Assembly: GCF_964204865.1 (NCBI RefSeq)
Contig: NC_135260.1
Location: forward strand, 20,274,001-20,338,000
DNA length: 64,000 nucleotides
From: Styela clava
Lineage: Eukaryota
Direction of reading: 5' to 3'
The notes under the pieces were generated by a model that worked only from the letters and a program-made list of their open reading frames with translations, had not been told where the DNA came from and ran no database searches. Numbering within the stretch: position 1 is the first letter of the stretch; the number at the start of each line of letters is the position of its first letter. Positions 1-59,760 of the stretch are shown piece after piece. The position numbers and the translations under genes are program-made.

Positions 1-144
1 ATTTCATGTTATTTTACATGTCCCCGCTTTTTACATGTTTGTAGATACAAATCTATACATTCTTTGCTCATACTCATAACTGTGTACTCTAAAAATAACA
101 TGATGATACATGGTATCAGCTGTTGTACAATTGTTTATACCCAC

Positions 145-571
145 CTCCTTTCATGACGCATCTGCAGTCGTGAACGCAGCAATGCATATTATCAGGATGT
201 TTATTGCAATCTTCAAATTTAACCAATTTTTGGTTACATAAGTTGTAGCATGGTACTAAATCACCTTTGAAGCCTCTTTCTGTAACAACAAAAATGTTAT
301 TAAGAATGGCTGTTGAGAATTGCTAAGTGTGACACCTCATAAGTTGATATTATCATAGATATTATCATATCGAGCCCCGCTAGATGTCTTATCTTTTCTC
401 AGAAAGAAAAAAAACTGTTTAAAATAAAACTGAGACAAAATTCTTACTTGGTTCGCATTGCTGCTGTCCCAATTTGTAGCGAAACTGAAAACATTTGAGT
501 TGACTGAATGGTGCCGCTTCACTTTCAAACAAGCTTACCATCAGAAGTAGAGAGACTGTTGCCACATTCAT
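145..571 (-). CDS. Cys-rich secreted protein family, copy 1 (exon 1 571-448, exon 2 279-145; exon 3 lies left of the window)
   Basis: ATG at 571; exon 1 MNVATVSLLLMVSLFESEAAPFSQLKCFQFRYKLGQQQCEP then GTAAG donor; TTACAG acceptor, exon 2 KRGFKGDLVPCYNLCNQKLVKFEDCNKHPDNMHCCVHDCRCVMKG then GTGGGT donor; exon sizes 124/135 bp identical to copy 2 and phases consistent. Confidence 0.75.
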
Positions 572-1319
572 GTTTGATCTACAGAGCTAAAATTGGCAAA
601 CACCAATTAATATTCAAAAATTCATATTGCAAAAATACCAATTTGGCAAGTGAACAATTGCTGGTCGTACAATGAAGGGAGTCATACACTAAATATCCCC
701 ATTCTCCGAATAGAAAAGGTCATGATATACATTTGCTTCCTGGTGTAATAAAAAATTCAAGCTGACGGGGTTCGAGCACCGGTTGCGTAATCAGGAATTT
801 TCAAAGAGGGGAGGGGATTCTGAAATTTGTAATTGTGAATTAAAACCGTATCAGCTGGTGGGTCAAGCAGGCTACGCCCCTGGGGGACGCACGTTGTTCT
901 GGATGAATATCAAACAGATACGATTATAATCTTGAGAATGCTGCCTCGTTAATTTTTTTGTAATTGAAGACATTGGAGATGGAATTACTAATTGTGCCGT
1001 AAATTATACCTGTGTAAAAATAGTTGGAACAATATTCAACCAAAGTCTAAGCGACTATAGATAGAAATCATAAGCAACCTTTTTATCGTCTCCGTGTTTG
1101 GTTGTCTCTTGTTGTGTTTCTGCAAGATGCTTGATGTCCCCAACTTTTCGTAGCACTATTTATACTATCTCATGCATCACCTCAAGCGTTTTTTTTTTAA
1201 ATCAGTGTGTAGATAGAACAATCGCATATGAGCATAATGACATTTAATATCACAGTGACATTTAAAGCCGCCTTCAGGATGCATAGGTAGGTTATTGTGA
1301 GAGAATGACATCGAGTGAA

Positions 1320-4300
1320 ATTGCTGATTACCTTCATACCGTTATGACGTCAATATGGTCTTACGGTATACCCCGATTTAAGAGAGTTCAAAAACCAACA
1401 TTGTTATTAGTAAATTTGCTCTTAATTTGAATAATTTTCATCAAGTCATCATCATCAAGTGCGATTTTTATTCTAATCTTCTATAAATAGATTTTTTCGT
1501 CGGAATTTGCTTATACTTTCAATTTATTTGAATGCAAATTGTAATACATACAACAATGACTGCAATAATCTTGAAATGTACGACCCAGACAGATTTTTAT
1601 CTGATAAAATCTTTGAAACTGAATAAGACAAGAACTGACAAAAGTGAAATCCTTACTTTCTTCAATATTGTGACTGTTTCAAATATACATTTTGCTAATG
1701 GATAGTAACTGTTTGAATAGGTGATTCTACAGTAATTCCAATTTGGTAATAGCTTGTCGTAATAAATGCCAACACGTAGTATATATAATTATTTATTTCG
1801 TATTGATTTGATTCATACTCACCCAAATACGTAATTTAGTATTAACTATCCTGAATTTTTTTCTTCCTTGGTCGTTGTTTTAATTAATCGCTTTGACATT
1901 CTACATGGAAATCATTTTCTGTCTTCATGGAATGCTGATACAGAAAACAGTTGCAATTAAGAAGATACGTGTATATGATATACGATATGTAACCGTTGTA
2001 AATTCACCATTTTGTTATACAATATAAATTAGACGTCCATTATAATTTAATAAAATTTTCAAATAAATATTCACGTAAAAATGAGTGTGAACCATTGTGG
2101 AATATCTGATGAAGTTGAATAATATTTTAAATTACAAAAATCATTGATTGGATTTTTATTAGAAAGTAATTTTTTTTAGGAAGGTGTCGTAGAACACAAT
2201 TGAAATTGAATTGCAGGATACACAAACTGCTTTGGGTATATGAAATGTAGTATTTATGATAAAGCATGCCATTTACAAATCTGTCAACTAGATTTTGTAA
2301 AATAACAAATGTAATGAATGCATCTTATTACACAACGGAAGCATCAGCTAACCACTTCTATTCCGATGTGACGTCCATATGGTGTTGCGGTATATCTCGA
2401 TTTGAATCGGAAGTTTTAGAAACCAACATTGTTGTTACTAAATTGTTTCGTAAGTTGAATAATTTATTCATCAGGTGCAATTTTTGAGATCATGTGCGAG
2501 GGCGCCTATTTTAATCTTTCGTAAATAGATTTTTTGATGTCATAATCCACCAAAATCTGCGTCATCTGTAATATGTGTTTATATGTATATATGTTTATAC
2601 GTATAATTCATTTACATGCAAATTTTATTGCTAAACAACTTAGTATTCAAATAGTCTTGACAAGTGTATACCTGGCCCACTCTGAATTTTATTTTTCCGT
2701 GATTAATGAAAATTGAAGTTGTATGTTGTTTTAGCTAATCTCTTTGACATTATTGAAACCGTCATAAAAAAAGTTTGGTCGAGTTTTTATGACCTAATCA
2801 AGAATATATCTAATCTAGAATATATTTTAATAATGGCTTTTATCACTTTACATAACACGCATGGCGTTGAATACTTCACTATTTCGAGTGCGTTGATTTT
2901 GTCCTACAATGCAAATTAGTTTTAAATTAGGAGTTAATCTGAAATTTATTTTAATTAAATGTGTATACAAAAAGTCGCAATTATAACGATACGTATTTGT
3001 TGCACGATACGTAACGTTGTAAGTTTACCCATTTATCATACAATGAAAATTAGACTTGGATTGAAAAAAACTTTCAATTGAATAATATTGTGAAAATGAG
3101 TGTGAAGCATGTTGGAATATCGGATTGAAGTGTTTTAAAGTGAAAGGCTCCTAAAAATTGATTTTTATTTCAAATTGCAAAGATCATTGATTAGATTTTT
3201 ATTAGAATAAAGAAACTTTTAGAAAGTTATCGTCGAATACTATTGAAATTGGATTAGTCTGCAGGATTCACAAACTATTTGGTTATATATCAAATGGGAT
3301 ATTTATGATGAAGCACGACATTTATAAATCTGTTAACTAGATTTTATAAAATAACAAGTGTAATATTGTGCCTGAATGCATCTCATTGTCAGAGAAACAC
3401 AACGGAAGCAGGGGTAACCACTTCCATTCCGATATGACGTCCATGTGCAAGTCTATTTTAATCGCTTATAAATAGAATTTTATATGTCATAATCTACTAA
3501 AATTTGCGTCATATGTTTGTATGTATGGCTTTACGTATAATTCATTTACATGCAAATTGTAATGTAACAATGACTTAATATTCATAACTGGACCAGATGA
3601 ATTTTTATTTTTTAAAAACGCAGGAAACCGAATAAGACATCTTCGATTTCATCAATGTTGTGAATGTTTCTGATATATATTTTGATAACGCAGCTGTTGG
3701 TGAAGTTGCTATTACGTATATATTTACAATATCTGGGAAACCGAGGTTACAATAAAAAGACAAAAATTCTCACACTTATGCGATTTTGTTAATGGTTTTG
3801 TCAATAATTCATTACATAACTCAGTTTGTTCCTACTTCAGCATGCTATCAGTATTTCGCACCTGATCTTATATAGTTAGTTTGTGCAATTAGTAATAAGA
3901 TAAATGGGTAATTTATTACTTAATACACGCATACTTCACTGTTTCAAGTGCGTTTGTTTTGATGTACAATGCAAATCAGGTTTTAATATGGAGTTAATCA
4001 GAAACTCATTTTAAGTAAATGTTGACAGTTAGTCAGTCACAATTAACACTATACGTAAAAGTTGTGAGGTCGCCGCTTTGTTGCATAAAAAAACTAGATA
4101 AAAAGAACTTTCAAATAAATGATCTAGTAAAATGGATGTGAACCATGGTGAAATATTGGATGAAAGCGTATTAGTGTAAAAGTTGTCGTCGAACACTATT
4201 GAAAGCGAAATAGTTTGTAGAATACCCAAACTACCAGGATTCTACGAAATAGTAGCCTATAAGTTAAAACACGTGATTTACAAATATTCGCAAGTAGATT

Positions 4301-4320
4301 TTGTGAAATATAAAATGGTA
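1320..4320. repeat. Three degenerate ~1-kb tandem subunits inside the duplicated upstream region
   Basis: Motifs GTYRTCGTMGAAYACWATTGAAA (about 2184, 3225, 4182) and CCGWTRTGACGTCMAT (about 1339, 2363, 3429) recur with about 1 kb period; same subunits occur in units 2-4. Confidence 0.75.
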
Positions 4321-5199
4321 TAAAGTTCGACGCGCTTACCGAAGCAAGATCGATTTTTGGTACATTTTCAATATTTGTTTTTTCTGTAGCTTTGATAATC
4401 CACATAAATTGCTAATAACCAGCCCCATTGGAATACATTCAATTCAATAAAAATTGGTAAATTTAGGTTTGGGGTCCACTAAATAGGATTATGCTACATT
4501 ACAATAAGACATGAAAAACGACAAAATTTATTGACTTTTTTAACTTTAAAAATTCAGAACTTATATGTAACTAACTAGAAATAGCTATGGTCAAATATAT
4601 GTACACGAAGTCCATAACGAAATGTTTCACCACCAATTCCCCGAAAATCATACGGTATCCTGAACAAAACTGAACAGCCACGGTATCTGGGTACCGGTAA
4701 CGGTACGCGGACTGTGCTAACTTTTCGAGGCCATGTGAAGATGATCTATCTAAACTACATGATTCAGTTTTGTAAAACTGTATTCCCGTGAGTAAAAAAG
4801 AATACAGCAAAAGTTTGAATGAAATATCAGATCTCATAGGATTCATAGAATATTTAGAGATAAATAAAAGTAATAGGCTTGTAGCGAAAAATGAAATCTT
4901 TAACCACTGAAAATTTCAAAGCATTTGATCCAGTAATTAATAAAGAGAAAGGCGATTTTTCCATAACCATCTTCTTCTTCAAACACAGAATCCTTAACCA
5001 CTATAAGCGAATTTGTGACGTATTAATAGCTCGTTTAACTTTCTTTTTTTCAGCCCACTCAAGCGCACTGTCGTGATACCGCGTTACCACGCCATCGCCG
5101 GTAAAGACATAATGATGGACAAAACGTACTCTTGTTTAAAAATGGGCGTCTCAAAATATCTCGTGTCCCATGGGAAATACAAATGTGTGCTGTCCCATC

Positions 5200-6776
5200 C
5201 AGTGGCGTAACTACCCATTGGATCTTGTGGATAAATCCAGGGGCGGCACGTTGCTGGAGCCTGGAGGGCGGCAAAATGTGGAAAAACGTTTTAAACGAAG
5301 CGAAAAAAAGTTTTCAATGAACCAAGGCAGTCACATTAAACAACCTAACTACCAATGAAGCCAAAATATTACACAAGATATACGTCTAAACCAGGTGTTT
5401 TATGGCTCGTGGCCCCCTTCCAGCGCCTATTCGCACTCGCGGTCTCCGTGTTCGGCATTCCAAAAAAGAAACGTGTTGGGTTGTATTATGTGTTTACGAC
5501 CTATTAGGGAATGCAAAAGCAAACCACAGACAAGAAAGTAAACGCTCTCCAGTATACAATCAAAGGGAATCTTGCGCTTAGGACTGTCTGACGCGGTTTA
5601 TCGTATTAGGCGCAGTCTTTTTTATAGCTAGACGAATGTCAACATCAAGACGGTTTATAAATTCTGTTTTTGTGGTAAGAAAAATTGGCTTTTGCTCTGA
5701 CAGAAAGCCGAACTTAGTCAATGTGCGTTCCTGTCAAATCTAACTCGCTTGGCAGCAAAGAAACGTTTTTCACCGGGGGTGGTTTTTGTTGCGGTATTTT
5801 GGAGTTCAGATGGACGTAATGATTTATTGCTCATTAAATACGAGCAATGCCAGCATTAATCACATTCTCTGACATCTCAATTTACTTTGGTAAAGTCAAC
5901 GGAACTGTTGTTGTTAGTACATCTTTCTGTACTTGAAGGCCCAGGAACGCAGCTATTCATGTGTTCATCCAAAACGGTACTGTGGTTCAATTTTCGTAAT
6001 TACGTCTATAATACGCTAGCGAAGGTTATCTCGCAGTCGAGTGGAACTGCCATTCTGTAGGTTAGGCCAGACGGCCTACCGGCGAACTATTTTCATTGGT
6101 AGATTTCAAATTCCCTTATGATCAAACAATTCACGCACAAAAAATGAATACACCCTGACCCTGTGATCGCAAATAATCCTATTCAGGTAATGAAACTACC
6201 GTGAAAAGTATGCAAACAAAGTCGCTATATAATAAATTATTAGTCTTGTGTCGTGGTCCCCCTCGAACTGCTTCGTGGCCCCTGTAGGGAGCCCTCGGAT
6301 GAGAACCACTGCACTAGTACAATCAAGTGATTTTACATTTAAAAATGACGCTACAGCGCTGGACGTAATGCAGTGGTTTGCAAACATCGTTTATGTGAAT
6401 CAACACCTTATTTATTCATGAGTCTCAAGCTTTACCTCACTGTTGCCGTTTCTTTCACAAGCTGCGAATAACGAAGTCAAAACCTAAGCTGGTAAAGTTT
6501 TACTTGAGATCGACTATGGGAGAAAGCAGGCTGCCTGTGCCAGCAATACTGCTCATTGAAAGTGATTTAGTCGAGACATTATCTTTTGACATATATATTT
6601 TCTGAATTTGCTCCAATGAAAACTAGACATTGAATTTGGAGCTTTCGAAAAAATTTACTATTCACTGCTTTAATTCTTCTGTTGTGTAGAATTTTATCCA
6701 GCTTTTACGACGGTGTTGAGGGGGCGGCATTTCGCGCAAAGATCCAGGGGCGCCACATTGCGTTGTTACGCCACTG
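5200..6776. mobile_element. Non-autonomous hAT-type DNA transposon
   Basis: TIRs CAGTGGCGTAAC / GTTACGCCACTG; perfect 8-bp TSD GTCCCATC (5192-5199, 6777-6784); right end repeated at about 45330-45683. Confidence 0.9.
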
Positions 6777-12480: not shown

Positions 12481-14794
12481 CCTGGCGTATAGTGTTCATT
12501 TTATTTACTCAGTATTTACCGGATATGACAGTATTTACTATGCAGTTACGATATTTTATTGCGTTTTTTTTTTCTTCTATAAATATTAGTGCCAAATTTT
12601 CAATATTGTATCTTGATTTACTGATTAACATTAAATTTATCAATACTTGTTTGTAATTTCTTCCACGATCTGTGCACAATTTTTGTTGAGCGTTCATATT
12701 TTGGGTTGGTAGTAAACTTTTGTACAAGAAAGAAGGTAAATCGTGGCTTTCAATCAAAAGGCAAATGTTCTTTCAAGTAGCCTCAGGTTGACTTTCGATA
12801 TAAGTGTGGTAGTTTGATTTTAAGACGTATGATCAAGAATGCTTAGGCCAATATTTGTTAATGTATATCACCTAATTGTCCGTAGCCCCGCAGATCCGAC
12901 GAGTATGTCTCAAGCTTAAGCTCGATTTTAGAGTTACTCCATCATGTTTTTACACGTGCTATTTGTAATGTTTTTGCCAGTCAATCAACCTGGTTTGTAA
13001 ACGTTTCCGTGCCCAAGCAAACAAGTCCTCTATCAAGTCATTCAACCATCAATATATATATGTTCTTTAAAGTAATAGTCTTTTCACTCTTGCCTTTATA
13101 TGCAATTATTGAAACATCTATACCCGTAGATTCATTTTGCAGTGTTCAGGTTGCTTCACAGCGATCAAATGAATTCAACAGCTCGCTTCTTCGTCAAATA
13201 TGGTTTTTATGGAATGTATGAAGACTTTGATGAGTATTCTATGCTATTTTCAAACTGACCACACAAACAAAAACACCTATCTGAATTTCATGGCTATAAA
13301 TAAAAAGCCAGACTTTTGCCCTTGATATCTAACATATCTTTCTACCAAATTTTTCCAACTCGGTACGATAATTCAATCATACTCCCTGATTTTATTAATT
13401 GGTATGATCTGGACTTTAATTTGGTTAGTTATGGAACAGGTGAAAAGGTGGTCTGGTCTAGCGTAGCACAGCTCTTCCTGCATCCAGCTAACAGCAAATT
13501 GGCATTAGAGAGACTACACCAATGATAGGCTTGGCGATACTTTTTATTACATAATATTTCTTTATTTTTCATTCTGTTCATCAGAATTGAATTCGGCAAT
13601 ACTTACAGTATTGTTGACATGACGTGACCAATACCCGTGTTTTATTGTTGTCTGGTTCTCTTTTTGTTTACCAAGTAATTTATTAATTTGTTACTACGTA
13701 AGTTTTTCTCGTTGTTTATTTTTATTCAATATATCGTTCTGTTTGTATGTGAGCGTGCGGGTATGTATAAATCAATATCATATATAATTTAAGTTAAGTG
13801 AATTCGAATCACTTCTTTCAACAAAATTCTCCAAATTCTATAGGTTTACTAAATATATGTAACATAGACTCAAAGACATTCGAGAAAATTGCCTTTGACT
13901 GCCTTGCGTTTACAATTCCAACTTCACATACCACGCTTATCCCATTGAAATGATTCCGTTTTTGTTAATACTTATATATTTCAGAACATATATCAGATTT
14001 ACATGCAGCATAGTCGAACGATACTTTGTCGGTAAAGGAATATATATATACCAACGGCGCACAACCTGCGGCCGTCGCGAAAAAAAAAATGCGGCCGTCC
14101 ACATACAAAATCCTATGAAAAAAAAGTTCAAAATATAGGATTTGGCGGCTATGCTGGCGTATATTGAAGCAAAACAGAAGCACTGCAAAAAAGTCAGACG
14201 ACACGATGCGTCACAATCTAGATTCTAGATGGTGTATTTGCTGCCAGTTACCTCACTTTGCAAGTTTATCTGCCCACATGCAAGATCAAAGGAGTCATTA
14301 AATTGCTACAATTCTTTGCAAACTTTTATAGAATAAATTCATAAAAATATTTGACATTTTATTATACTTTTGGGGACAAGAAAATGGGGGCGACCGCCCC
14401 TCCCCGACTTTGGATTTTTTCCAAAATTGTGCAACCATTATGCAACTTGCTGAATATATCTGCTCTAGAATAGGTCCACCGACAAAAAAAATCCTTTTAA
14501 ATTGCGAATATTATACTTTCAAGTAGTCCTACATACTTCATAATTGGGCAGAGTGCACCTCGCACGGGTCAAACACGCGGTTATGACGTCATAAAGCCAA
14601 AAAATTTCGCGCGCCTTCGCCGCGATATTAACCTCCTGGCAGCCGTATTGTATAAAAATAAATGCAATGTGGCCGCCAATAGCAAAAAGGTTGTGCACCC
14701 CTGATATATACAAATAGAAAGATATCGACAGACACGAATATTGGATTGAAATGAAAATTCGAATTTCATACTGATGGAGTATAAGTAATATATA

Positions 14795-15730
14795 CTAATT
14801 ACAGCCATCTTCGACGCCCATTTCCCATTTCATACCCATCTGCTCGAATATTGCATTCATTTTTTTTGCAAATTGCGATACAAAGTGATCATTTGCAATA
14901 CATTTGGTCGCGGGTGGCTTTTTTTCATTTTGTTCAGTTGTCTCGGCGTTTGTTTTGCTTGCAACAGTAGTTTCAGATTCTCTAATCTTCCCGAAAATGG
15001 GATATTTCTCTTCTGGTTCACATCCTTCTTTTACTTCGGTCTTCATCCACTGCGATAACTTTTCATCGTCGAGAGTAAGTGTGTAGTTTTGAGGAATTTC
15101 AACAAATCCGGCTAGAAAGAAATGCAGAAGAGTATCAGATACCATGTCATTTAACATGCCCCCGCTTTTTCAAATTTGTGGCATAAAAATTCATACATTC
15201 TTTGCTCATCGTGTATATCAATACTTATAACGGTGTAGTATAAAGATAACATAATGAGACATGGTATCATCAGTTGTTGTGTTATTGTTTATACCCACCT
15301 CCTTTTATGACGCATCTGCAGTCGTGAACGCAGCAATGCTTATTAGCAGGATGTTTATTGCAATCTTCAAATTTAACCAATTTGTTGTCGCATAAGTTGT
15401 AGCATGGTACTAAATCACCTTTGAAGCCCCTTTCTGTAACAACAAAAATGGTATTAGGAATGGCTGTTGAGAATTGTTGTGTAACACCCCATAAGTTGAT
15501 ATTATCATAGATATTATTAAATTATCATATCGAGCCCCGCTGGATGTCTTATCTTTCCCCAGAAAGGAGAAACCTTGTTTAAATGAAACTGAGACAAAAT
15601 TCTTACTTGGTTCACATTGCTGCTGTCCCAATTTGTAGCGAAACTGAAAACATTTGAGTTGAGTGAATGGAGCTGCTTCAATTTCAAACAAGCTTACCAT
15701 CAGAAGTAGAGAGATTGTTGCCACATTCAT
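14795..15730 (-). CDS. Cys-rich secreted protein family, copy 2: complete 3-exon gene, 191 aa (exons 15730-15607, 15433-15299, 15111-14795)
   Basis: Hydrophobic N-terminus MNVATISLLLMVSLFEIEA-AP; both introns GT-AG and phase 1; spliced CDS 576 nt with no stop until TAG at 14797-14795; 12 Cys. Confidence 0.8.
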
Positions 15731-15936
15731 CTTTGATCTATAGAGCTGCAATCGGCAAACACCAGAAAATACTCAAAAATAGTGCTAAAATATCATTTTG
15801 GCAAGTGAATGATTGCTGCTCATACAATAAGGGGAATCATACACTAAACATCCCCTATTCTTTTAATAGAAAAAGGTCATGGTATACTATTGCTTTATGT
15901 TGTAATAAAAATTTAAGCTGTAGCTAACGGGGACAC

Positions 15937-16037
15937 CAGTTGCGTAACCAGAAATTTTCAGAGGGGGAGGGGGTTCTGAAATTTTAATTGTGAATTGAAA
16001 CCGTATCAGCTAGCGGGTCCGAAATGCTACGCCCCTG
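15937..16037. mobile_element. ~100-bp hAT-type MITE about 200 bp upstream of the ATG; orthologous copies at about 780-882, 25713-25804 and 58013-58116
   Basis: Ends CAGTTGCGTAAC / GCTACGCCCCTG with TSD GGGGACAC/GGGGACGC. Confidence 0.7.
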
Positions 16038-18563
16038 GGGGACGCACGCTGTAGCCTACTGGATGTATATCAAACAGTAAAACACAATAATCTCGAGAAT
16101 GTTGCATCGTTAAATTTTTTTTTATTTGAAGACCTTGAAAATGGGATTAAATATTGTGCCGTAACTTATACATGTATAAAAAATCAATGGAAACAATATT
16201 CAACTAAAGTCTAAGCGACTATAGATAGAAATCATAAACAACCTTTTTATCGTCTCCGTGTTTGGTTGTCCCTTGTTGTGTTTCTGCAAGATGCTTGATG
16301 TCCCCAACTTTTCGTAGCACTATTTATACTATCTCATGCATCACTTCAGGCGTTTTTTTTAAATCAACATCCGCTGATCACCTCCATACCGTTATGACGT
16401 CAATATGATCCTACGATATACCTCGATTTCAGAAACCAACATTGGTATTAGTAAATTTTTTCTTACTTTGAATAATTTTCTCTAATCTTCCACAAATATA
16501 TTAGATCACAATCCATCGGAATTTGTTCATACTTTCAACTTATTTGAATGCAAATTGTAAAACAACAATGACTGAAATAATCTTGAAATGTGCATAAACG
16601 ACCCAGACGGATTTTCATCTGATAAAATCGTTTGAAACTAAATAAGACAGAAACTGACAAATGTAAATTCCTCACTTTCTTCAATATTGTGACCTGTCAG
16701 TATTTTGCATCTGATCTTATATAATTAAGGTTAATGGAAGACACTGGTGTTCAGGTAGTTCATAAAATAGGCAAATGCGTATTACATACCCTCATTTTTA
16801 TTCTTTCTTAGCTGTTGTTTTAGCTAATGTCTTTGACATACTTCATGGAAATCAGTTTCTGTCTTCATGAAATGCTGATACAGAAAACAGTTGTAATTAA
16901 GAAGATACGTGTATGATGTAATATGTAACCGTTGTAAATTCACCATTTTGTTATATAATAACAATTAGATGTCAATTATAATTAAATTAAATTTTCGAAT
17001 AAATGTTGAGTAATATAATAAAAAGTTGAATAATAGTTTAAATTACGAAGATGCTTGATTGGATTTTTATTAGAAACTAATCTTTTTTTTCAGGAAGTTG
17101 TCGTCGAAAGTATTGAAATTGAACATCGGCTAACCACCTCCATTCCGATATGACGTCCATTCGCAAGGGCGTCTATTTTATTCGCTTATAAATGGATTTT
17201 TTGATGCCATAATCCGCCACAATTTGCGTCATTTGTTTTATGTATGGCTGTACGTATATTCATTTACATACCAATTGTAATGTAACAATGACTTAATATT
17301 CAAATATTTTTGACAAGTACTTGGCCCAGACGGATTTTTATCTTTTAAATACGCATGAAACCGAATAAGATAAACAAAAATTTTCTATTTCATGAATGTT
17401 GTGAATGTTTCTGATATACTTTGATACCGCAGCTGATGGTAAAGTTGCTATTACGTACATATTCACAATATTTGGGAAACAGAGGTTACAATAATAAGAC
17501 AAAAGTAATCCAGCACATAACTTATCTTGTTCATACTATACCATGCTATCAGTATTTTGCACCTGATCTTATTTAGTTAGTTTGTGTAGTTTAGTAATTA
17601 GATAAATGGGTAATTCAATATTTAATACTCTGAACTGTATGCCTCTTTGACGAATGAATATTGGTGTTTTAAATTTTAGTGAGTTCTTGCGACATTATTC
17701 TAAGCAAGAATGTTTTTTCAATTTTGGTAATGAAGTCTATCACTTAAAACAACACACAGGACAACGCTTTACTTTACTGTTTTCGAGTGCATTTGTTTTT
17801 TTGTTGTATAATGCAAATCAGGTTTCAATTTGGTGTTGTTCAGAAATTCATTTTAAGTAAATGTTGATACAGTAGACAGTCACAAATAATACGATACGTA
17901 AAAGTTGTGAGGTCGCCGCTTTGTTGCATAATGAAATTACATAAAAAGAATTTTCAAATAAATGATCTAGTAAAATGAATGTGAACCATGGTGAAATATT
18001 GGATGAAAGCGTATTAGTGTAAAAGTTGTCGTCGAACACTATTGAAAACGGATTAGTTTGTAGGATACCCAAACTACCAGGATAGTTTATAAAATTAAAC
18101 ACGTGATTTACAAATATCGGCAAGTAGATTTTGTGAAATATAAAGTGGTATAGAGTCCGACGCGCTTACCGAGGCAAGATAAATTTTTGGTACATTTTTT
18201 AATATTTGTTTTTCTGTAGTTCTAATAATCCCCATAAATTGCAAATAACCAGCCCCATTGGAATACATTCAATTCAATAAAAATGGTAAATTTAGGTTTA
18301 GGGTCTACTAAATAGAATTATGCTACATTACAATAAGACAACAACAAAATGTATTGACTTTGTTAACTCTAAAAATTCAGAACCAATATATAACTAACTA
18401 AAGACAGCTATGGTCGAATATATGTACACGAAGTCCATAACGAAATGTTTTACCACCAATTCTACGAAAATCCTTCGGTTTCCTGAACAGCCACGCTATC
18501 TGGGTACCGGTAACGGTACGCGGACTGTTCTAGCTTTTCCTGGCCATGTAAGATGATCTATAC

Positions 18564-24419: not shown

Positions 24420-24979
24420 AACTGAACCCGTGTAGCCAGCGTGTGTCTTGCATATATGATATTCTTCTTTTTATGATAATGGTTGCGCAAAATCACCATA
24501 GCTTCATCATACACATCCATCACAAAGAAAAACACGTTAGTAATAAAATCCACCAATGATAGCACATTTGTTAATATGCCTTGAAACACCTTCCTTGGAT
24601 CTGTTAGATTCCACAGCTGTTAAGTAATTTGCAAGCATCCTGTCCCAATGGGAAAATACTTTTAGAGCTCCAACTTCATTTAGCAAGACATAAAGCACTG
24701 GCACCCGAATAAGTTTTTCGTCGGAAGTTGCCATTGCTTTCGGAAAACCAGTTAATCGTTTCAAGTTTTGAGCTAATAAAATTGTGGTGAACCTAATACA
24801 GAAAGAAACAAACTTGTATACTAGGCTTTTATTAGCTCGAACGTCGACTAAGAGTCTTAAAGCAGCACAAACCAAAGAATGACTTTCAAATCAAAACACC
24901 ATGCTATTAAAGGACGAACAGTATACGTCAGCAAGGTCAAATGTCGTGGCTGTTTTAGGTGTTGCTAGATTTCAAGACA

Positions 24980-25497
24980 TATCTGGCTAGAAAGAAATGC
25001 AGAATGGCATCATATTTCATGTTATTTTACATGCCCCCGCTTTTTACAAGTTTGTGGATACAAATCCATTCATTCTTTGCTCATCGTGTATATCAATACT
25101 TATTATAAACTGTGTACGCTAAAGATAACATAATGATACATGGTATCAGCTGTTGTGTTAAAGTTGTAGCATGGTACTAAATCACTTTTGAAGCCCCTTT
25201 CTGTAACAGCAATATGGTATTAAGAATGGCTGTTAAGAATTGTTTAAGTGTTACACAAGTTGAAATTATCATAGATATTATCATATCGAGTCCCGCTAGA
25301 TGTCTTATCTTTCCTCAGAATGGAAAAACCCTGTTTAAAATGAAACTGAGACAAAATTCTTACCTCACCCCAATTCTTTCGCATTGATGCTGTCCCAATT
25401 TGTAGCAAAACTGAAAACATTTGAGTTGACTGAATGGTGCTGCTTCAATTTCAAACAAGGTTACTATCAGAAGTAGAGAGATTGCTGCCACATTCAT
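24980..25497 (-). pseudogene. Cys-rich secreted protein family, copy 3 (pseudogene)
   Basis: ATG at 25497; +10-nt change before the exon 1 donor shifts phase; most of exon 2 and its donor deleted at about 25161; exon 3 cut after about 7 nt by the Gypsy A LTR. Confidence 0.85.
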
Positions 25498-28400
25498 CTT
25501 TGATTTATAGAGATGCAATCGGCAAACACCAAAGAATATTCAAAAATTCATATTGCAAAACCAGTGCTAAAATAGCAATTTGGCAAGTGAACAATTAATG
25601 GTCATACAATAAGGGGAGTCATACACTAAACATCCCCTGTTCTCCGAATATAAAAGGTCACGATATACATTTGCTTCCTGGTGTAATAAAGAATTCAAGC
25701 TGACGGGGGCACCAGTTGCGTAACCAAGAATTTTCAAAGAGGGAGGGGGGTCTGAAATTGTTTAAAATCGTATCAGCTGGTGGGTCAAGCAGGCTACGCC
25801 ACTGGGCGACGCACGTTATTCTGAATATCAAACAGATACGATCAAAATCTCGAGAATGCTGCATCGGTCATTTTTTTTCAATTGTAGACATTGGGAATGG
25901 AAGTTAAACTGTGCCGTAAATTATACCCGTGAAAATAGATGAAAACAACATTCAACTAAAGATTAAGCGACTATAAATAGAAATTATAAGCAACCTTTTC
26001 TATTGTTTCTGTTTTTGGTTGTCTCTTCTTGTAATTCTGCAGGATGCTTGATGTCCCTAACTTTATGGTCAATATGGTCTTACGTTATACCCCGATTTAA
26101 GAGAGTTTCAGAAACCACCATTGGTATTAGTAGTTTTTTTCTTAATTTGTGTAATTTTCGTCACCAAGTGCAATTTTTATTTTAAGCTTCTATAAATAGA
26201 TTTTTTCGTCAAAATTCATCAGAATTTACTTATACTTTCAATTTATTTTAATGCTAAATGTAATACAACAATGACTGCAATAATGAAATGTACGATCCAG
26301 ACGGATTTTCCAGACGATAAAATCGTTTGAAACTGAATAATATAGAAACTGACAAAAGTGAAATCCTCACTTTCTCCAAAATTGTGACTGTTTCAAATAT
26401 ACATTTTGCTAATGGATAGTAACTGGGTTGATAGGTAACTAATATTTACAGTTAGTCCATCTTGGTAATAGCTTGCGGTAATAAACTCCAACACGTAGTA
26501 TATGTATTTATTCCATATCGATTGATTCCTACTTACAAATCCTGTCAGCATTTTGCACCTGATCTTATTTAATTAAGGTTAACGCAAGACACTGGTGTTT
26601 AGGTAGTTCATAAATTAGGCAAATGCGTACTTTAGTATTAACTACCCTGAATTTTGCCCTCAGCCGTTGTTTTAACTAATTGCTTTGGCAGTGTTCATAA
26701 AAATAAGTTTCTGTCTTCATGAAATGCTGATACAGAAAACAGTTGCAATTAAGAAGATACGTGTATATGATATACGATATGTAACCTTTGTAAATTCACC
26801 GATTTAGTATATAATAAAAATTAGACGTCACTTATGAATGAATGAAATTTTCGAATAGATGTTCACGTAAAAATAAGTGTGAACTATTGTGGAATGTCTG
26901 ATAAAATTGAATAATATTTTAAATTACGAAGATCGTTGATTGAATTTTTATTAAAAAATAATTTTTTCAGAGGTTGTCGTTGAACACTATCAAAATTAAA
27001 TTTGTGTGCAGGATACACAAACTGCTTTGGTTAAAGGAAATGGCATATTTATGATAAAGTACGTCATTTACAAATTTGTCAACTAGAGTTTGTAAAATAA
27101 CAAATGTGATGATGTGCCCGAATGCATCTTAATGTCAGAGAAACACAACGGAAGCATCGGCTTACCACATCCATACCGATATGACGTCCATATAGTGTTG
27201 CGGTATACATCGATTTGAATCGGAAGTTTTAGAAACCAACATTGTTATTACTAAATCGTTTCGTAAGTTGAATAATTTTATTCAATCAGGTGAGTTCATG
27301 TGCGAGAGCGCCTATTTTAATCTCTCGTAAATAGATTTTTTGATGTCACAATTCACCAGAATCTGCGCCATCTGTAATATGTATTTATATGTATGTATAT
27401 ATAATACCTGGTCCAGACGGATTTTTATCTTTTACAAGCGCAAAAAACTGAATAAGATAAACGAAAATCTTCGATTATTGTTGTGAATGTTCCCAATATA
27501 CATTTTGATACTGAATTGTAACTGTTGGTAAAGTCACTATTGCGTACATATTACATAGTATTTGGTAAACCGAGGCTGCAATGAAATGACAAAAATTCAT
27601 AAAATTTGTCAATGGATTGGTCTAATAAACCAGCACATAACCCATTTGGTTCATACTTCCCCACACTGCCAGTATTTTTCAATTGATCTTATATAATTAG
27701 GGTTAAAGTAAAAGACTTGGGATCAGGTAGTTTATGAATTAGCCAAATGGTTATTTTAGTACTCAACACTCTGAATTTTATTCTTCCGTGATTAATGAAA
27801 ATTGAAGTTGTATGTTGTTTTAGCTAATCCCTTTTACATCACTGAAACCTTCATGAAAACAGCTTGGTGAGTTCTTGTAACCTTGTTCTAAGCAAGAATA
27901 TATTTTATTTTAATAATGGCGTTTATCACTTTACATAACACGCATGACGTCGCATACTTTACTGTTTCGAGTGCGTTGATTTTGTCCTACAATGCAAATT
28001 AAGTTTTAATTTGGAGTTATTCTGAATTTATTTTATTTAAATTTGGGTACAAATGGTCGCAATCATAGCGATACGTATATGTTGCACGATACATAACATT
28101 GTAAGTTTACAGCTTCATTATACAATGAAAATTACACTTTGATTAGGATTGAAATAACTTTTAAATGAATGATCATATAAAATGAGTGTGAAGCATGGTG
28201 GAATATTGAGTGGAAGTGTTTTAAAGTAAAAGACTTCTAAAACTTGATTTTTATTTTGAACTGCAAAGATAATTTATCGGATTTTTATTAGAAAGAAGAA
28301 ACTTTTAGGAAGTTATCGTCGAACACTATTGAAATTGGATTAGTCTGTAGAATACACAAACGGCTTCGGTTATATCCAATGGGATATTTATGATAAAGTA

Positions 28401-56814: not shown

Positions 56815-59760
56815 AGTATTTAATTAATTGCAACTATTTTCTGTATCAGCTTTTCATGAAGACAGAAACTGATTTCCATGAAAAATATCAAAGAGATTAG
56901 CTGAAACAACGACTAAGAAAAAATAAAATTGTGGATAGTTAATACTAAAGTACGCATTTGCCTAATTTATGAACTACCTAAACACCAGTGTCTTGCAACC
57001 TCAATCAAATAAGATAAGGTGCAAAATACTGACGATATGGGTAAGTAGGAATAAATCAATGTAGAATAAATAACTACGCTAAGTGTTGGCGTTTTTACCG
57101 TAAGCTATCACCAAAATGGAATTATTGTAGATATTAGTTACCTATCAACATAGTTACTATCCATTAGCCAAATGTATATTTGAAATAGTCTCAACTCTCA
57201 ATATTGGAGGAAGTGAAGATTTCACTTTTGTCAGTTTCTGTCTTATTCAGTTTCAAACGATTTTATCAGATGAAAATCCGTCTGGGTCGTTTATGCACAT
57301 TTCATGATTATTTCAGTCATTGTTGTATTACAATTTACGTTCAAATTAATTGAAAGTATAAGCAAATTCTGATGAAATTGGACGAAAAAAATCTATTTAT
57401 AGAAGATTAGAATGAAAATTGCACTTGATGACTAAAATTATTCAAATTAAGAAAAAAATTACTAATAACAATGTTGGTTTCTGAAACTCTCTTAATTTCG
57501 AGGTATATTGTAAGACCCTATTGACGCCATAACGGTATGAAGGTGCTCAGCGGATTCAGCTCAGCGATGTCATTCTCTGACAATAACCTAGGAATCCTGG
57601 AGGCGACCTAAAAATGTCACGGTGTTGTGACGTTATGGAAAATATCCTTTTTTATTTCTGTAATTTCATAATGTTGAAAATTTGGCGCAATTGATAGATA
57701 AACCACTCATATGCGATTGTTCTATCTACATGGGTGCAATACGAAAAGTTCGGGACATCAAGCATCTTGCAGAAACACAGGAAGGGACAACCAAAAACGG
57801 GAACGATAAAAAGGTTGCTTATGATTTCTATCTATAGTCGTTTAGACTTTAGTTGAATATTGTTTCCATCCATTTTTACACAGGTATAATTTACGCCACA
57901 ATTTGTAATTCCATTTCCAATGTTTTCAAATGAAAAAAAAAATTAACGATGCAGCATTCTCGAGATTATAAGCGTATACTGCTTGATATTCATCCAGAAC
58001 AACGTGCGTCCCCCAGGGGCATAGACTGTCGGACCCGCCAGCTGATACGGTTTTAATTCACAATTACAAATTCCAGAATCCCCCTCCCACTTTAAAAATT
58101 CCTGGTTACGCAACTGGCGTCCTCGTCAACTACAGCTTTAATTTTTATTAGAACAGACGGCAAATGTATATTATGACCTTTTTGTTTTCGGCGAATAGGG
58201 GATTACAGCTCTGTAGACCAAAGATGAATGTGGCAACAGTCTCTCTACTTCTGATGGTAAGCTTGGTTGAAATTGAAGCAGCACCATTCACTCAACTCAA
58301 ATGTTTTCAGTTTCGCTACAAATTGGGACAGCAGCAATGTGCACCAAGTAAGAATTTTGTCTCAGATTGTTTCAGTTATCAAATTAAAAGGTCACACTTA
58401 AACAATTCTCGGCAGCCTTTTTGAATACCATTTTTGTTGTTACAGAAAGAGGCTTCAAAGGTGATTTAGTACCATGGTACAACTTATGTAACAAAAAATT
58501 GGTTCAGTTTGAAGATTGCAATAAACATTCCGGTAATATGCATTGCTGCGTTCACGACTGCAGATGCGTCTTGAGAGGAGGTGGGTATAAACAATAACAC
58601 AACAGCTGATACCATGTATCATCATTTTATCTTTGGAGTACACAGTTATAAGTATTAATTAATATACACGATGAGCAAAGAATGTATGGATTTGTATGCC
58701 ACAAATTCGAAAAAGCGGGGTCACGTGAAATAACATGGTATTTGACACTCTTCTGTATTTCTTTCCCGTCGAATTTGTTGAAATCCCTCAAAACTATACA
58801 TTTTACCTCGACGATGAAAAGTTATCGCAGTGGATGAAGACAGAAGTAGAAGAAGGATGTGAACCAGAAAAGAAATATCCCATTTCCGGAAAGATGAGAA
58901 AATCTGAAAGTACCAATTACAATTCTGATCCACAACCAAGATAAAGATTTGACAATCCAGGAAACAGATTTAGTTAAAAGTTCAGTTAACGCGGTCCCAG
59001 AAACTACTGTAGCAAGCAGCAAATGGAACGTTTCGCGGCGTATTGATAGTGATAAATAGAAATGTTTTGTTGAAAGAAGTGGCCCGTATTCATCTAACTT
59101 AAATTATGATATTGATTTATACATACTCACACATACTATACTGTAATGACTAAAAATAAAACGAGAAAAACCTAAAAAGAAAACAGAAAGAGAGAACCAG
59201 AAAAACTGTCAAAATGGTTTTTGTTACTCATATTAATAATATTGTAAGAACTGCCATTGAATACCGCGAAGTAAACAAACAAACATACAGAAGTAAACGA
59301 TGAAGAAAAAGAATTTATTAAGAAGTATCGCCAAATATTTTTGATGCAAAATTTCCGAGAATTTATACAAGTTGAATGCACGAAGAGACGAGCTATACGC
59401 TATTCACCTGTTGCATAAGTAACCAAATCAGATTTCAGATAATATGAATTAATAAAAGCGATCAATGAGTATGATTAAATTATGGTACTGAGATAGGAAA
59501 ATCTGGCAGGAAGATTATGTTAGATATTAAAGGCCAAAGTCGGGCTCATTATTTATAGCCATCAAATTCTGATGGGAATACGTGGATAGAGCCTGACGTT
59601 AGATATGGTCAATTGGAAATTAGCATAGGATAGTTATCAAAGTCTTCATACACGTTACAAACATAATTGACGAACAAGCAAGCTGTTAAATTAATATTTG
59701 ACCGCTGTGAAGCAACCTGAACATTGAAAAATGAATCTACGGGTAAATGTTCTCAATAAG
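56815..59760. repeat. Segmental duplicate unit 4 (inverted)
   Basis: Reverse complement of about 1-1960 / 14950-16900, plus downstream homology to 13100-13460. Confidence 0.88.
58224..58944 (+). pseudogene. Cys-rich secreted protein family, copy 4 (exons 58224-58347, 58446-58580; exon 3 acceptor lost)
   Basis: Exons 1-2 open but C52 changed to W; exon 3 acceptor TTCTAG changed to TTCCCG; exon 3 frame stops at 58944; about 100 bp deleted just upstream of the ATG. Confidence 0.7.

What the first reader, a model, noticed from the sequence alone, without database searches (positions are those of the whole stretch)
14795..15730. Unrecognised family of small Cys-rich secreted proteins, visible only after splicing
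Seen: a 3-exon gene splices to 191 aa with a signal-peptide-like start and Cys spacing C-x11-C-x12-C-x3-C-x9-C-x8-CC-x3-C-x-C, then a Glu/Thr/Lys-rich tail with 3 more Cys (12 in total). The Cys-rich exon 2 is missing from the ORF track. A KR dibasic site forms at the exon 1/2 junction. Inference: C-x3-C-x-C...GF loosely recalls TIL protease-inhibitor domains but the spacing does not fit. It may be a lineage-specific defence, recognition or extracellular-matrix protein.
Basis: partly seen in the sequence, partly recalled or inferred. Interest (0 to 1): 0.75.

Follow-up and report, generated by a model that had tools for sequence, protein, structure and literature searches.

The report
Sea-squirt-only secreted cysteine-rich protein family

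Summary
On the minus strand, 15730-15607 / 15433-15299 / 15111-14795 splice through GT-AG introns into 191 aa with 12 Cys at the stated spacing. The genome is Styela clava. RefSeq already has the gene as 'uncharacterized protein LOC120348046' (P0001, 181 aa), with the same two junctions but starting at Met11.

A fourth, non-coding 5' exon exists (joint 15745/16243). The spliced RNA-like contigs come from the neighbouring paralog, not this copy (19 of 19 variant letters).

The gene belongs to a family of about 26 copies in clusters on three contigs. All full-length members share a signal peptide, a ~99-aa domain with 8 or 10 Cys, a variable Ser/Thr/Pro/Lys linker and a Cys-closed C-terminal loop.

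No Pfam or PDB sequence match was found. Only 10 of 1.84 billion representatives match: 8 S. clava, 2 unnamed. TIL and WAP fail profile comparison. This is an orphan secreted family of moderate interest.

The parts
16321..16328 (-). TATAAATA box upstream of the 5' non-coding exon
   Evidence: Read. It lies about 37 nt upstream of the furthest 5' base covered by the paralog's transcript contig (record 8). Promoter function is inferred, not tested.
16243..16284 (-). 5' non-coding exon (minimum extent), with no ATG; donor GT at 16242-16241
   Evidence: Joint 15745>16243 (skips 497, CT..AC on +) in run X1; 42 letters of that contig lie beyond the joint. The contig itself derives from the paralog L002. 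This copy's 5' exon is 98% identical to it. Sequence read.
15746..16242 (-). intron 0 (497 nt, GT..AG), in the 5' UTR
   Evidence: by homology with the expressed paralog.
15607..15745 (-). Exon with the start codon (ATG 15730-15728). It encodes the signal-peptide-like MNVATISLLLMVSLFEIEAA and the start of the Cys domain (Cys27, Cys39), and ends in phase 1.
   Evidence: The ATG and the MNV... peptide are conserved in 7 of 7 C14 copies. Mean Kyte-Doolittle hydropathy of residues 3-15 is 2.48.
15434..15606 (-). intron 1 (173 nt, GT..AG)
   Evidence: joint 15433>15607 in X1 (paralog-derived); same junction in RefSeq protein P0001.
15299..15433 (-). Phase 1-1 exon of 135 nt encoding the core of the Cys-rich domain (7 Cys: 52, 56, 66, 75, 76, 80, 82)
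   Evidence: 28 matches in the genome, 26 of them at E<0.001. Holds 8 of the 10 invariant family columns.
15112..15298 (-). intron 2 (187 nt, GT..AG)
   Evidence: joint 15111>15299 in X1 (paralog-derived); same junction in P0001.
15014..15111 (-). First part of the last exon: the end of the ~99-aa N-terminal domain (AGFVEIPQNYTL...EGCEP, with the nearly invariant Cys117)
14903..15013 (-). Linker of 37 aa (30% Ser/Thr/Pro, 19% Lys/Arg, 19% Asp/Glu), the shortest in the family
   Evidence: linkers of the 12 full-length members are 37-196 aa.
14795..14902 (-). C-terminal Cys-closed loop (Cys157...Cys190, CIANDHFVSQFAKKMNAIFEQMGMKWEMGVEDGCN) plus the stop codon TAG at 14797-14795
   Evidence: The motif is conserved in 12 of 12 full-length members. 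Maximum helical hydrophobic moment over 18 residues is 0.49 here.
14673..14794 (-). 3' UTR, minimum extent
   Evidence: X1 record 3 covers 14673-14911 with 3 differences in 239, against about 91% identity for the paralog over this stretch. This is the only RNA-like contig attributable to this copy.
5..601 (-). 5' part (exons 1-2) of the neighbouring intact paralog, which straddles the window start (L002; closest to P0004, LOC120347699)
   Evidence: This is the copy whose spliced transcripts run X1 holds.
24969..25527 (-). Decayed family copy: exon 1 altered before its donor, and most of exon 2 deleted
58201..58913 (+). Family copy with Trp at the invariant Cys52 position and a premature stop or frameshift in the last exon, with no C-terminal loop: a probable pseudogene

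Best explanation
Shown: this is an intact four-exon gene of the tunicate Styela clava (RefSeq LOC120348046), with one non-coding and three coding exons. It encodes a 191-aa precursor with three conserved parts after a hydrophobic N-terminal signal-like peptide. (1) A ~99-residue domain with 10 Cys (eight family-wide plus one subfamily-specific pair). (2) A short Ser/Thr/Pro/Lys/Glu linker. (3) A 34-residue C-terminal loop closed by two Cys. It is one of about 26 copies of a family in tandem clusters on three contigs. The family is under purifying selection and has no detectable relatives among known protein families. Inferred: the protein is secreted. The eight core Cys form four disulfides, Cys27-Cys56 form a fifth, and Cys157-Cys190 close the C-terminal loop. 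The N-domain is the constrained binding module. The linker is a disordered, probably O-glycosylated spacer that changes length freely. My preferred mechanism, held at modest confidence, is an abundant extracellular coat or matrix protein of the tunic, mucus or an epithelial surface. The folded N-domain would dock onto a matrix or surface ligand, and the amphipathic C-terminal loop would mediate a second contact or self-association.
For: Gene model: canonical GT-AG sites and an open frame. RefSeq protein P0001 equals the three window exons in order, with K and A at the split codons. Homologous joints appear in RNA-like run X1, which has zero depth in the introns. Start codon: the MNV... ATG is conserved in 7 of 7 C14 copies; the hydrophobic core VATISLLLMVSLF has mean hydropathy 2.48. 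Family: exon 3 has 7 copies on C14 and a weak one on C19. Exon 2 has 26 matches at E<0.001: 7 on C14, 1 on C19 and 18 on C18. Constraint: exons are 84-97% identical, while the introns of L007-L009 align over only 13-92 of 173-497 bases. dN/dS is 0.37-0.51 against six C14 copies and 0.13 against the C19 copy. Architecture: 10 invariant columns (7 Cys, 2 Gly, Tyr) and a nearly invariant Cys117 and C-terminal Cys. N-domain length is 92-101 aa in 12 of 12 members; linkers are 37-196 aa with 29-48% Ser/Thr/Pro. Extra disulfide: Cys27 and Cys56 are both present in 7 members and both absent in 6, which needs one change on the tree (support 94/93). No known kin. Bulk-product argument: near-identical ~9.15-kb tandem units on C18, and the linkers are mucin-like or Pro/Lys-rich (older NCBI names 'proteoglycan 4-like' and 'repetitive proline-rich cell wall protein 1-like').
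Against: No read-level RNA evidence exists for this copy's own junctions: all 19 variant letters of the spliced X1 contigs match the neighbour L002. Only one low-depth contig (depth 3.7, 3' end) fits this copy. X1 is labelled RNA only by a guess. No signal-peptide predictor was available, and the -3 residue of the most obvious cleavage site (EAA|P) is Glu, which is atypical (from my own knowledge of the -3/-1 rule). The Cys27/Cys56 co-occurrence rests on a single evolutionary event. Tissue, stage and abundance of expression are unknown, so 'matrix or coat protein' is an argument from architecture and gene dosage only. This copy has the shortest linker and sits among two decayed copies. dN/dS of 0.4-0.5 is only moderate constraint. 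Linkers of the C14 subfamily are near neutral (pI 6.5-9.6) whereas those of C18 and C19 are very basic (pI 10.4-12.0), so the subfamilies may not share one ligand.
Confidence: 0.5

Rival explanations
1. Humoral defence effector. The cationic disulfide-rich N-domain and/or the amphipathic C-terminal loop bind or permeabilise microbes. Tandem expansion and linker turnover would reflect an arms race.
For: The family is lineage-restricted and tandemly expanded. N-domain pI is 8.2-9.6 in 9 of 12 members, and linkers of C18/C19 members have pI 10.4-12.0. The C-terminal loop has a helical hydrophobic moment of up to 0.66. S. clava blood cells are a known source of helical, Phe-rich antimicrobial peptides (PMC10608444, passages read).
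Against: There is no sequence relation to any known antimicrobial family in Pfam. The proteins are large and modular (181-346 aa). dN/dS is below 1 throughout, with no sign of positive selection at this resolution. There are no expression data after challenge. The C14 C-terminal loops are acidic in 3 of 5 members (pI 4.9-5.6).
Confidence: 0.22
2. Protease inhibitor of the TIL or WAP type: a divergent member whose spacing has drifted.
For: A local motif resemblance only. C-x3-C-x-C followed by G..GF recalls the TIL C-terminal half, and DC...CC-x3-C recalls WAP.
Against: Pfam TIL and WAP give no hit at E<=10 for any of the 16 members or for P0001. The same Pfam models find 57 TIL and 5 WAP domains in this genome, none at a family locus. 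hhalign probability is 0.5% over 8 columns for TIL and 1.9% over 16 columns for WAP. Cys number and spacing differ: 8 core Cys over ~80 residues, against 10 in ~55 for TIL and 8 in ~40 for WAP.
Confidence: 0.04
3. This particular copy is a silent or decaying duplicate. The family is real, but LOC120348046 contributes little or nothing.
For: It has the shortest linker, missing about 30-40 residues that its closest paralogs have. X1 depth over the one contig assignable to it is 3.7, against 18-67 for the neighbour's contigs. Two decayed copies lie in the same window.
Against: The open frame is intact. All 12 Cys and all 10 invariant columns are kept. Splice sites are canonical. The TATA box and 5' exon are 98% identical to the expressed neighbour. 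dN/dS is 0.37-0.51. The linker difference is in frame, and linker length varies family-wide. Contig depth is not a measure of expression (tool's own caveat).
Confidence: 0.12
4. Reproductive protein, such as an egg-coat or sperm-surface recognition factor, evolving by tandem duplication.
For: It is a species-restricted, tandemly duplicated, secreted Cys-rich protein with a rapidly changing linker. From general knowledge, this is a profile shared with gamete-recognition genes.
Against: There is no similarity to any known gamete protein family in Pfam. There are no tissue data. The binding domain shows purifying rather than positive selection.
Confidence: 0.08

Closest known systems
TIL (trypsin-inhibitor-like cysteine-rich domain, Pfam PF01826)
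   Same: Both are small secreted disulfide-rich modules, and both have a C-x3-C-x-C stretch followed a few residues later by Gly and an aromatic residue.
   Different: There is no HMM hit at E<=10, and hhalign gives 0.5% over 8 columns. TIL has 10 Cys in about 55 residues. This domain has 8 core Cys spread over about 80 residues, including a CC doublet and a last Cys 34 residues after the C-x-C. It is not a member.
WAP four-disulfide core (Pfam PF00095), as in crustin-type defence proteins
   Same: Both have eight Cys and a DC...CC-x3-C stretch. The modular layout of signal peptide, low-complexity region and Cys domain is reminiscent of crustins (recalled, not tested).
   Different: There is no HMM hit, and hhalign gives 1.9% over 16 columns. 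The spacing before and after the CC differs, and the domain is more than twice as long. It is not a member.
Mucin-like or lubricin-type secreted proteins ('proteoglycan 4-like', the name older NCBI annotation gave three C18 members)
   Same: Both have a folded Cys-rich N-terminal module, a Ser/Thr/Pro/Lys-rich repetitive spacer of variable length and a small C-terminal module. This is what the family most plausibly works like.
   Different: The name reflects linker composition only. Pfam finds no somatomedin-B, hemopexin or any other domain. This copy's linker is only 37 aa and is not repetitive. This is an analogy of architecture, not homology.
RefSeq models of the same family in Styela clava (LOC120347848, LOC120347699, LOC120347698, LOC120347690, LOC120334349, LOC120341535, LOC144432183, LOC120340917, LOC120341099, LOC120340422, LOC120340883)
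   Same: These are true homologues: 86-93% identical over the N-terminal 80 residues for the C14 copies, with profile E-values of 1e-23 to 1e-111 and the same three-part layout.
   Different: All are annotated 'uncharacterized' or given composition-driven names, and none has a described function. This copy has the shortest linker. C18 members lack the Cys27/Cys56 pair and have very basic Pro/Lys-rich linkers.

Membership tests
TIL (PF01826) | Match to the Pfam TIL profile at or near the gathering score (24.5 bits) | tested here: not met
   No TIL hit at E<=10 for the three exons, for P0001/P0002 or for the 16 family members. Positive control: the same model finds 57 TIL domains in this genome at E<=1e-5, none at a family locus.
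TIL (PF01826) | Profile-profile similarity to genuine TIL domains | tested here: not met
   hhalign of A2 against 12 S. clava TIL domains (A3): probability 0.5%, 8 aligned columns.
TIL (PF01826) | Ten Cys in about 55 residues with the spacing seen in A3 (C-x8-C-x3-C-x3-C-x8-15-C-x3-C-x3-4-C-x-C-x9-13-C-x5-C) | tested here: not met
   The family core is C-x12-C-x13-C-x7-8-CC-x3-C-x-C-x~34-C (8 Cys). This copy adds Cys27 and Cys56.
TIL (PF01826) | TIL fold and disulfide topology | not testable with these tools
WAP four-disulfide core (PF00095) | Match to the Pfam WAP profile (cut-off 20.8 bits) | tested here: not met
   No hit at E<=10. Control: 5 WAP domains found in the genome, none at a family locus.
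WAP four-disulfide core (PF00095) | Profile-profile similarity to genuine WAP domains | tested here: not met
   hhalign of A2 against 5 S. clava WAP domains (A4): probability 1.9%, 16 columns.
The Styela Cys-rich/linker/C-loop family defined here (no public name) | N-domain with invariant C39, G44, C52, Y53, C66, C75, C76, C80, C82, G86 (191-aa numbering) and the near-invariant Cys117 | tested here: met
   All are present in this gene; profile E = 6.3e-68 for P0001.
The Styela Cys-rich/linker/C-loop family defined here (no public name) | C-terminal Cys-closed loop with the F..F[AF].[KR][ML]...G[FMLV] motif | tested here: met
   Cys157-Cys190 loop present.
The Styela Cys-rich/linker/C-loop family defined here (no public name) | Phase-1 introns after 'C-x-P' and after '[KR]-G' | tested here: met
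   The same positions are implied by the read-through translation of the unnamed foreign contig protein P0015 (inference).
Secreted proteins (classical signal peptide) | N-terminal hydrophobic core followed by a small-residue cleavage site; no other membrane span or anchor signal | tested here: inconclusive
   A hydrophobic core is present and conserved, and there is no hydrophobic C-terminus. No dedicated predictor was available, and the -3 residue is Glu for the EAA|P site.

The most novel reading that the evidence does not exclude
The ~99-residue N-domain is a new disulfide-rich fold confined to styelid sea squirts. The family would be a dosage-amplified, modular surface-defence or tunic-coating system. 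The N-domain would dock onto a tunic glycan or a microbial surface. The mucin-like or polycationic linker would act as spacer or polyanion binder. The Cys-closed amphipathic C-terminal loop would be the membrane- or interface-active end. That would make it a lineage-specific invention contributing to the tough, fouling-resistant tunic of an invasive species.
Probability: 0.12. Interest if true: 0.6.

Novelty: new variant of a known kind. Interest (0 to 1): 0.36.

Why it matters
Taxonomically restricted, tandemly amplified secreted proteins are where much lineage-specific biology sits: tunic, adhesion, immunity and fertilisation. They are invisible to domain-based annotation. Here about 26 genes of an invasive fouling species share a well-defined ~99-residue disulfide domain and a C-terminal loop, and no database recognises either. 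Defining the family gives a handle for a Pfam-style entry, for correcting the RefSeq start codon of LOC120348046, and for targeted expression and proteomic work on the tunic. The find is solid but of a common kind: orphan Cys-rich secreted families turn up in most marine invertebrate genomes, and nothing yet ties this one to a specific function.

Tried and rejected
- **Pfam, exon by exon and on database proteins.** Only noise came back: RBD_RDR6 E=0.093, DUF1823 E=0.021, DUF4097 E=0.049, WDCP E=0.25, DUF2981 E=0.33. All are far below their cut-offs, each in only 1 of 16 members, and all fall in linker regions.
- **PDB sequences with the protein and with the profile.** 0 matches at E<=10.
- **ESM Atlas.** P0001 is not held. 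P0004 is held, but there is no model and no usable feature hit.
- **Literature.** None of five LOC identifiers appears in any paper. 'Styela' plus 'proteoglycan 4-like' returned 0 papers. I read only the listings, and nothing in them was relevant. In the S. clava genome paper PMC7540406, a term search found only the two Hsp70 tandem-duplication passages. Supplementary tables of S. clava transcriptome and proteome papers were closed and could hold expression values for these loci.
- **Antimicrobial-peptide lead.** I recalled a resemblance between the C-terminal motif of the C14 subfamily and the helical haemocyte antimicrobial peptides of S. clava. The review I opened (PMC10608444, passages) prints their sequences only in a figure. 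The resemblance is therefore untested and I do not rely on it. The motif is in any case not conserved in the C18/C19 subfamilies.
- **KR at the exon junction as a convertase site.** Rejected as not conserved.
- **Cys27/Cys56 covariation as independent proof of a disulfide.** Downgraded: it needs only one change on the tree.
- **Earlier scan notes.** The three notes near this place concern Gypsy elements and a TLR fossil, not this gene. A word search gave nothing.
- **Origin of P0014 and P0015.** Not resolved. They are at most 48-49% identical to any copy in this genome, so they are foreign, but their organism is unknown.
Full report
**1. The observation**

Reading the minus strand of 14500-16100 shows an ATG at 15730-15728. 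There is a GT donor right after 15607 and an AG acceptor right before 15433. A second GT donor follows 15299, an AG acceptor precedes 15111, and a TAG stop sits at 14797-14795.

The three pieces translate to 41, 44 and 104 whole codons. The two split codons are AAA (Lys) and GCC (Ala), which gives 191 residues.

Cys stand at 27, 39, 52, 56, 66, 75, 76, 80, 82, 117, 157 and 190. The middle exon shows up in the mechanical ORF list only as a 32-aa TTG-started ORF, so at the usual 60-aa threshold it is indeed invisible.

**2. Identity of the gene**

A word-indexed search with the last exon alone found a 181-aa NCBI protein with 100% identity. The query was the unaltered 120-aa ORF, scored over the exon part. 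The hit is 'uncharacterized protein LOC120348046 [Styela clava]' (P0001).

So the genome is the leathery sea squirt, and both coding junctions already stand in RefSeq.

- The upstream ATG and the peptide MNV(A/V)T... are conserved in 7 of 7 copies on this contig, each about 15 nt after an AG acceptor.
- The more distant copies have no Met at position 11.
- Only the long form has a hydrophobic core (VATISLLLMVSLF, mean hydropathy 2.48).

No signal-peptide predictor was available, so secretion is inferred.

**3. RNA evidence, and its limit**

One reads call was allowed. In run X1 the depth is zero in all three introns, although the run is labelled RNA only by a guess. Its contigs carry joints at 15111/15299, 15433/15607 and 15745/16243, all CT..AC on the plus strand, which is GT..AG for this gene.

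It ends at 16243, contains no ATG, and is preceded by TATAAATA at 16328-16321.

However, those contigs differ from the window at 5-8 letters per 100. All 19 listed variant letters match the neighbouring paralog L002, which straddles the window start. The spliced transcripts are therefore the neighbour's, at homologous positions.

Only one X1 contig fits this copy: 14673-14911, with 3 differences in 239, at depth 3.7. The paralog is about 91% identical over that stretch. X6 shows faint paralog signal and X9 none.

Run X2 carries perfect contigs through the introns and behaves as DNA. It may be the sample the assembly came from, so it is not independent support.

**4. The family**

In the window's own genome:
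- The last exon has 7 copies within about 110 kb of contig C14, three on the minus strand and four on the plus strand, plus a weak one on C19.
- The middle exon has 28 matches, 26 of them at E<0.001. That is 7 on C14, 1 on C19, 4 at C18 12.81-12.84 Mb and 14 at C18 14.35-14.41 Mb.
- The last group lies in near-identical ~9.15-kb units, each with a plus-strand and a minus-strand copy.

The exhaustive HMMER search used a profile of six database proteins plus unaltered single-exon translations of C19/C18 copies (A1). It found only 10 of 1,835,955,588 representatives at E<=0.001. Eight are S. clava RefSeq proteins. All are 'uncharacterized', or in an older annotation 'proteoglycan 4-like' or 'repetitive proline-rich cell wall protein 1-like'.

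The other two (P0014, P0015) are unnamed products of short Logan contigs.

A last word-indexed search with the broadened alignment A2 found 9 proteins among 1687 candidates, all already known.

**5. Architecture**

The alignment of 14 members has ten invariant columns. In 191-aa numbering these are C39, G44, C52, Y53, C66, C75, C76, C80, C82 and G86. P41, P51, H74, C117 and the C-terminal Cys are nearly invariant.

The Cys-rich domain therefore spans the end of the first coding exon, the whole middle exon and the first ~32 residues of the last exon. It is 92-101 residues long in 12 of 12 full-length members.

The rest of the layout is as follows:
- A linker of 37-196 residues follows the domain. 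It is 29-48% Ser/Thr/Pro and 14-37% Lys/Arg.
- Linker charge differs by subfamily: near neutral in the C14 subfamily (pI 6.5-9.6) and very basic in C18/C19 (pI 10.4-12.0, with PTPKKP-type repeats).
- A 34-40-residue loop between two Cys carries a conserved aromatic and amphipathic motif.

This gene has the shortest linker of all.

Cys27 and Cys56 are both present in 7 members and both absent in 6. This fits an extra disulfide. On the tree, however, it needs only one change (support 94/93), so it is a single event rather than repeated covariation.

The K-R pair at the exon junction is not conserved and sits between invariant domain residues. I therefore do not read it as a processing site.

**6. 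Constraint**

Exons are 84-97% identical across the C14 copies. The introns of the three more distant copies align over only 13-92 of 173-497 bases.

dN/dS was counted exon by exon and summed without joining. It is 0.37-0.51 against the six C14 copies and 0.13 against the C19 copy. The coding sequence is under moderate purifying selection.

Two other copies in the window are decayed:
- 58201-58913 has Trp at the invariant Cys52 position and a premature stop or frameshift in the last exon.
- 24969-25527 has lost most of the middle exon.

**7. Comparison with known families**

Pfam gives nothing meaningful for the exons, the database proteins or the 16 alignment members. PDB sequences give nothing at E<=10 with either the protein or the profile.

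The Pfam TIL model finds 57 domains and WAP finds 5 in six-frame mode, none at a family locus.

Profile-profile comparison of the family with 12 of those 57 TIL domains (the best-scoring ones for which loci were returned) and with all 5 WAP domains gives:
- TIL: probability 0.5%, 8 columns, just the C-x3-C-x-C stretch.
- WAP: probability 1.9%, 16 columns.

The family is a member of neither. The Atlas holds no model.

**8. What it most likely is and does**

Shown: an intact, constrained, spliced gene for a modular Cys-rich protein of a Styela-centred family with no detectable known kin.

Inferred:
- The protein is secreted.
- The core has four disulfides, with a fifth between Cys27 and Cys56 and a sixth closing the C-terminal loop.
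- The linker is disordered and probably O-glycosylated.

My preferred reading is an extracellular coat or matrix protein of tunic, mucus or epithelial surface. The N-domain would bind a ligand, the linker would act as spacer, and the C-terminal loop would make a second contact. This rests on the mucin-like layout and on the dosage-type tandem amplification, not on any expression or binding data.

A defence-effector role is the main rival. It is supported by cationic domains, an amphipathic loop and lineage-specific expansion. Protease inhibitor, reproductive protein and 'this copy is silent' are lesser rivals.

**9. Novelty and score**

The gene model itself is public. What is new is:
- the recognition of a ~26-gene family with a defined domain and C-terminal loop;
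- the four-exon structure;
- the likely RefSeq start-codon error;
- the exclusion of TIL and WAP.

No paper in the searchable library names these loci. Supplementary tables were closed and may hold expression values.

Orphan secreted Cys-rich families are common in marine invertebrates, so a specialist would not be very surprised. Interest is moderate (0.36). I class it as a new variant of a known kind: lineage-specific secreted modular proteins.

Noticed in passing
window 58201-58913 (+): Another copy of the family with Trp in place of the invariant Cys52. Its last exon stops after ...KSESTNYNSDPQPR, with the following sequence readable only in another frame. No C-terminal loop was found. Probably a pseudogene, and not represented among the RefSeq proteins found.
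   Followed up: partly
window 24969-25527 (-): Decayed family copy. Exon 1 is altered just before its donor, and exon 2 is cut after ...PCYN and joined to intron-2-like sequence.
   Followed up: partly
window 14300-14703: Depth in the DNA-like run X2 jumps to 1500-6500, against 50-200 over the gene, and many contigs break at 14703-14705. This is a high-copy repeat abutting the gene's 3' UTR. It was not classified.
   Followed up: no
G000:C18:14350000-14410000 (loci L017-L019): About 9.15-kb tandem units, near identical, each holding one plus-strand and one minus-strand family copy (14 exon-2 matches). This is a very recent segmental amplification, or possibly partly an assembly expansion.
   Followed up: partly
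window 15701-15730 (-): The RefSeq protein for LOC120348046 starts at Met11. The upstream in-frame ATG with the MNV... signal peptide is conserved in 7 of 7 C14 copies, so the RefSeq start is probably 10 codons short.
   Followed up: yes
proteins P0014, P0015 (Logan contigs of 1.5 and 2.5 kb): Two unnamed foreign sequences carry the family's Cys core. P0015 reads through what look like introns at the same two positions as in S. clava. The source organism is unknown, presumably another ascidian.
   Followed up: partly
G000, genome-wide: The genome holds at least 57 TIL-domain exons, many in tandem on C16 19.68-19.80 Mb and C3 14.36-14.41 Mb. They are unrelated to this family.
   Followed up: no
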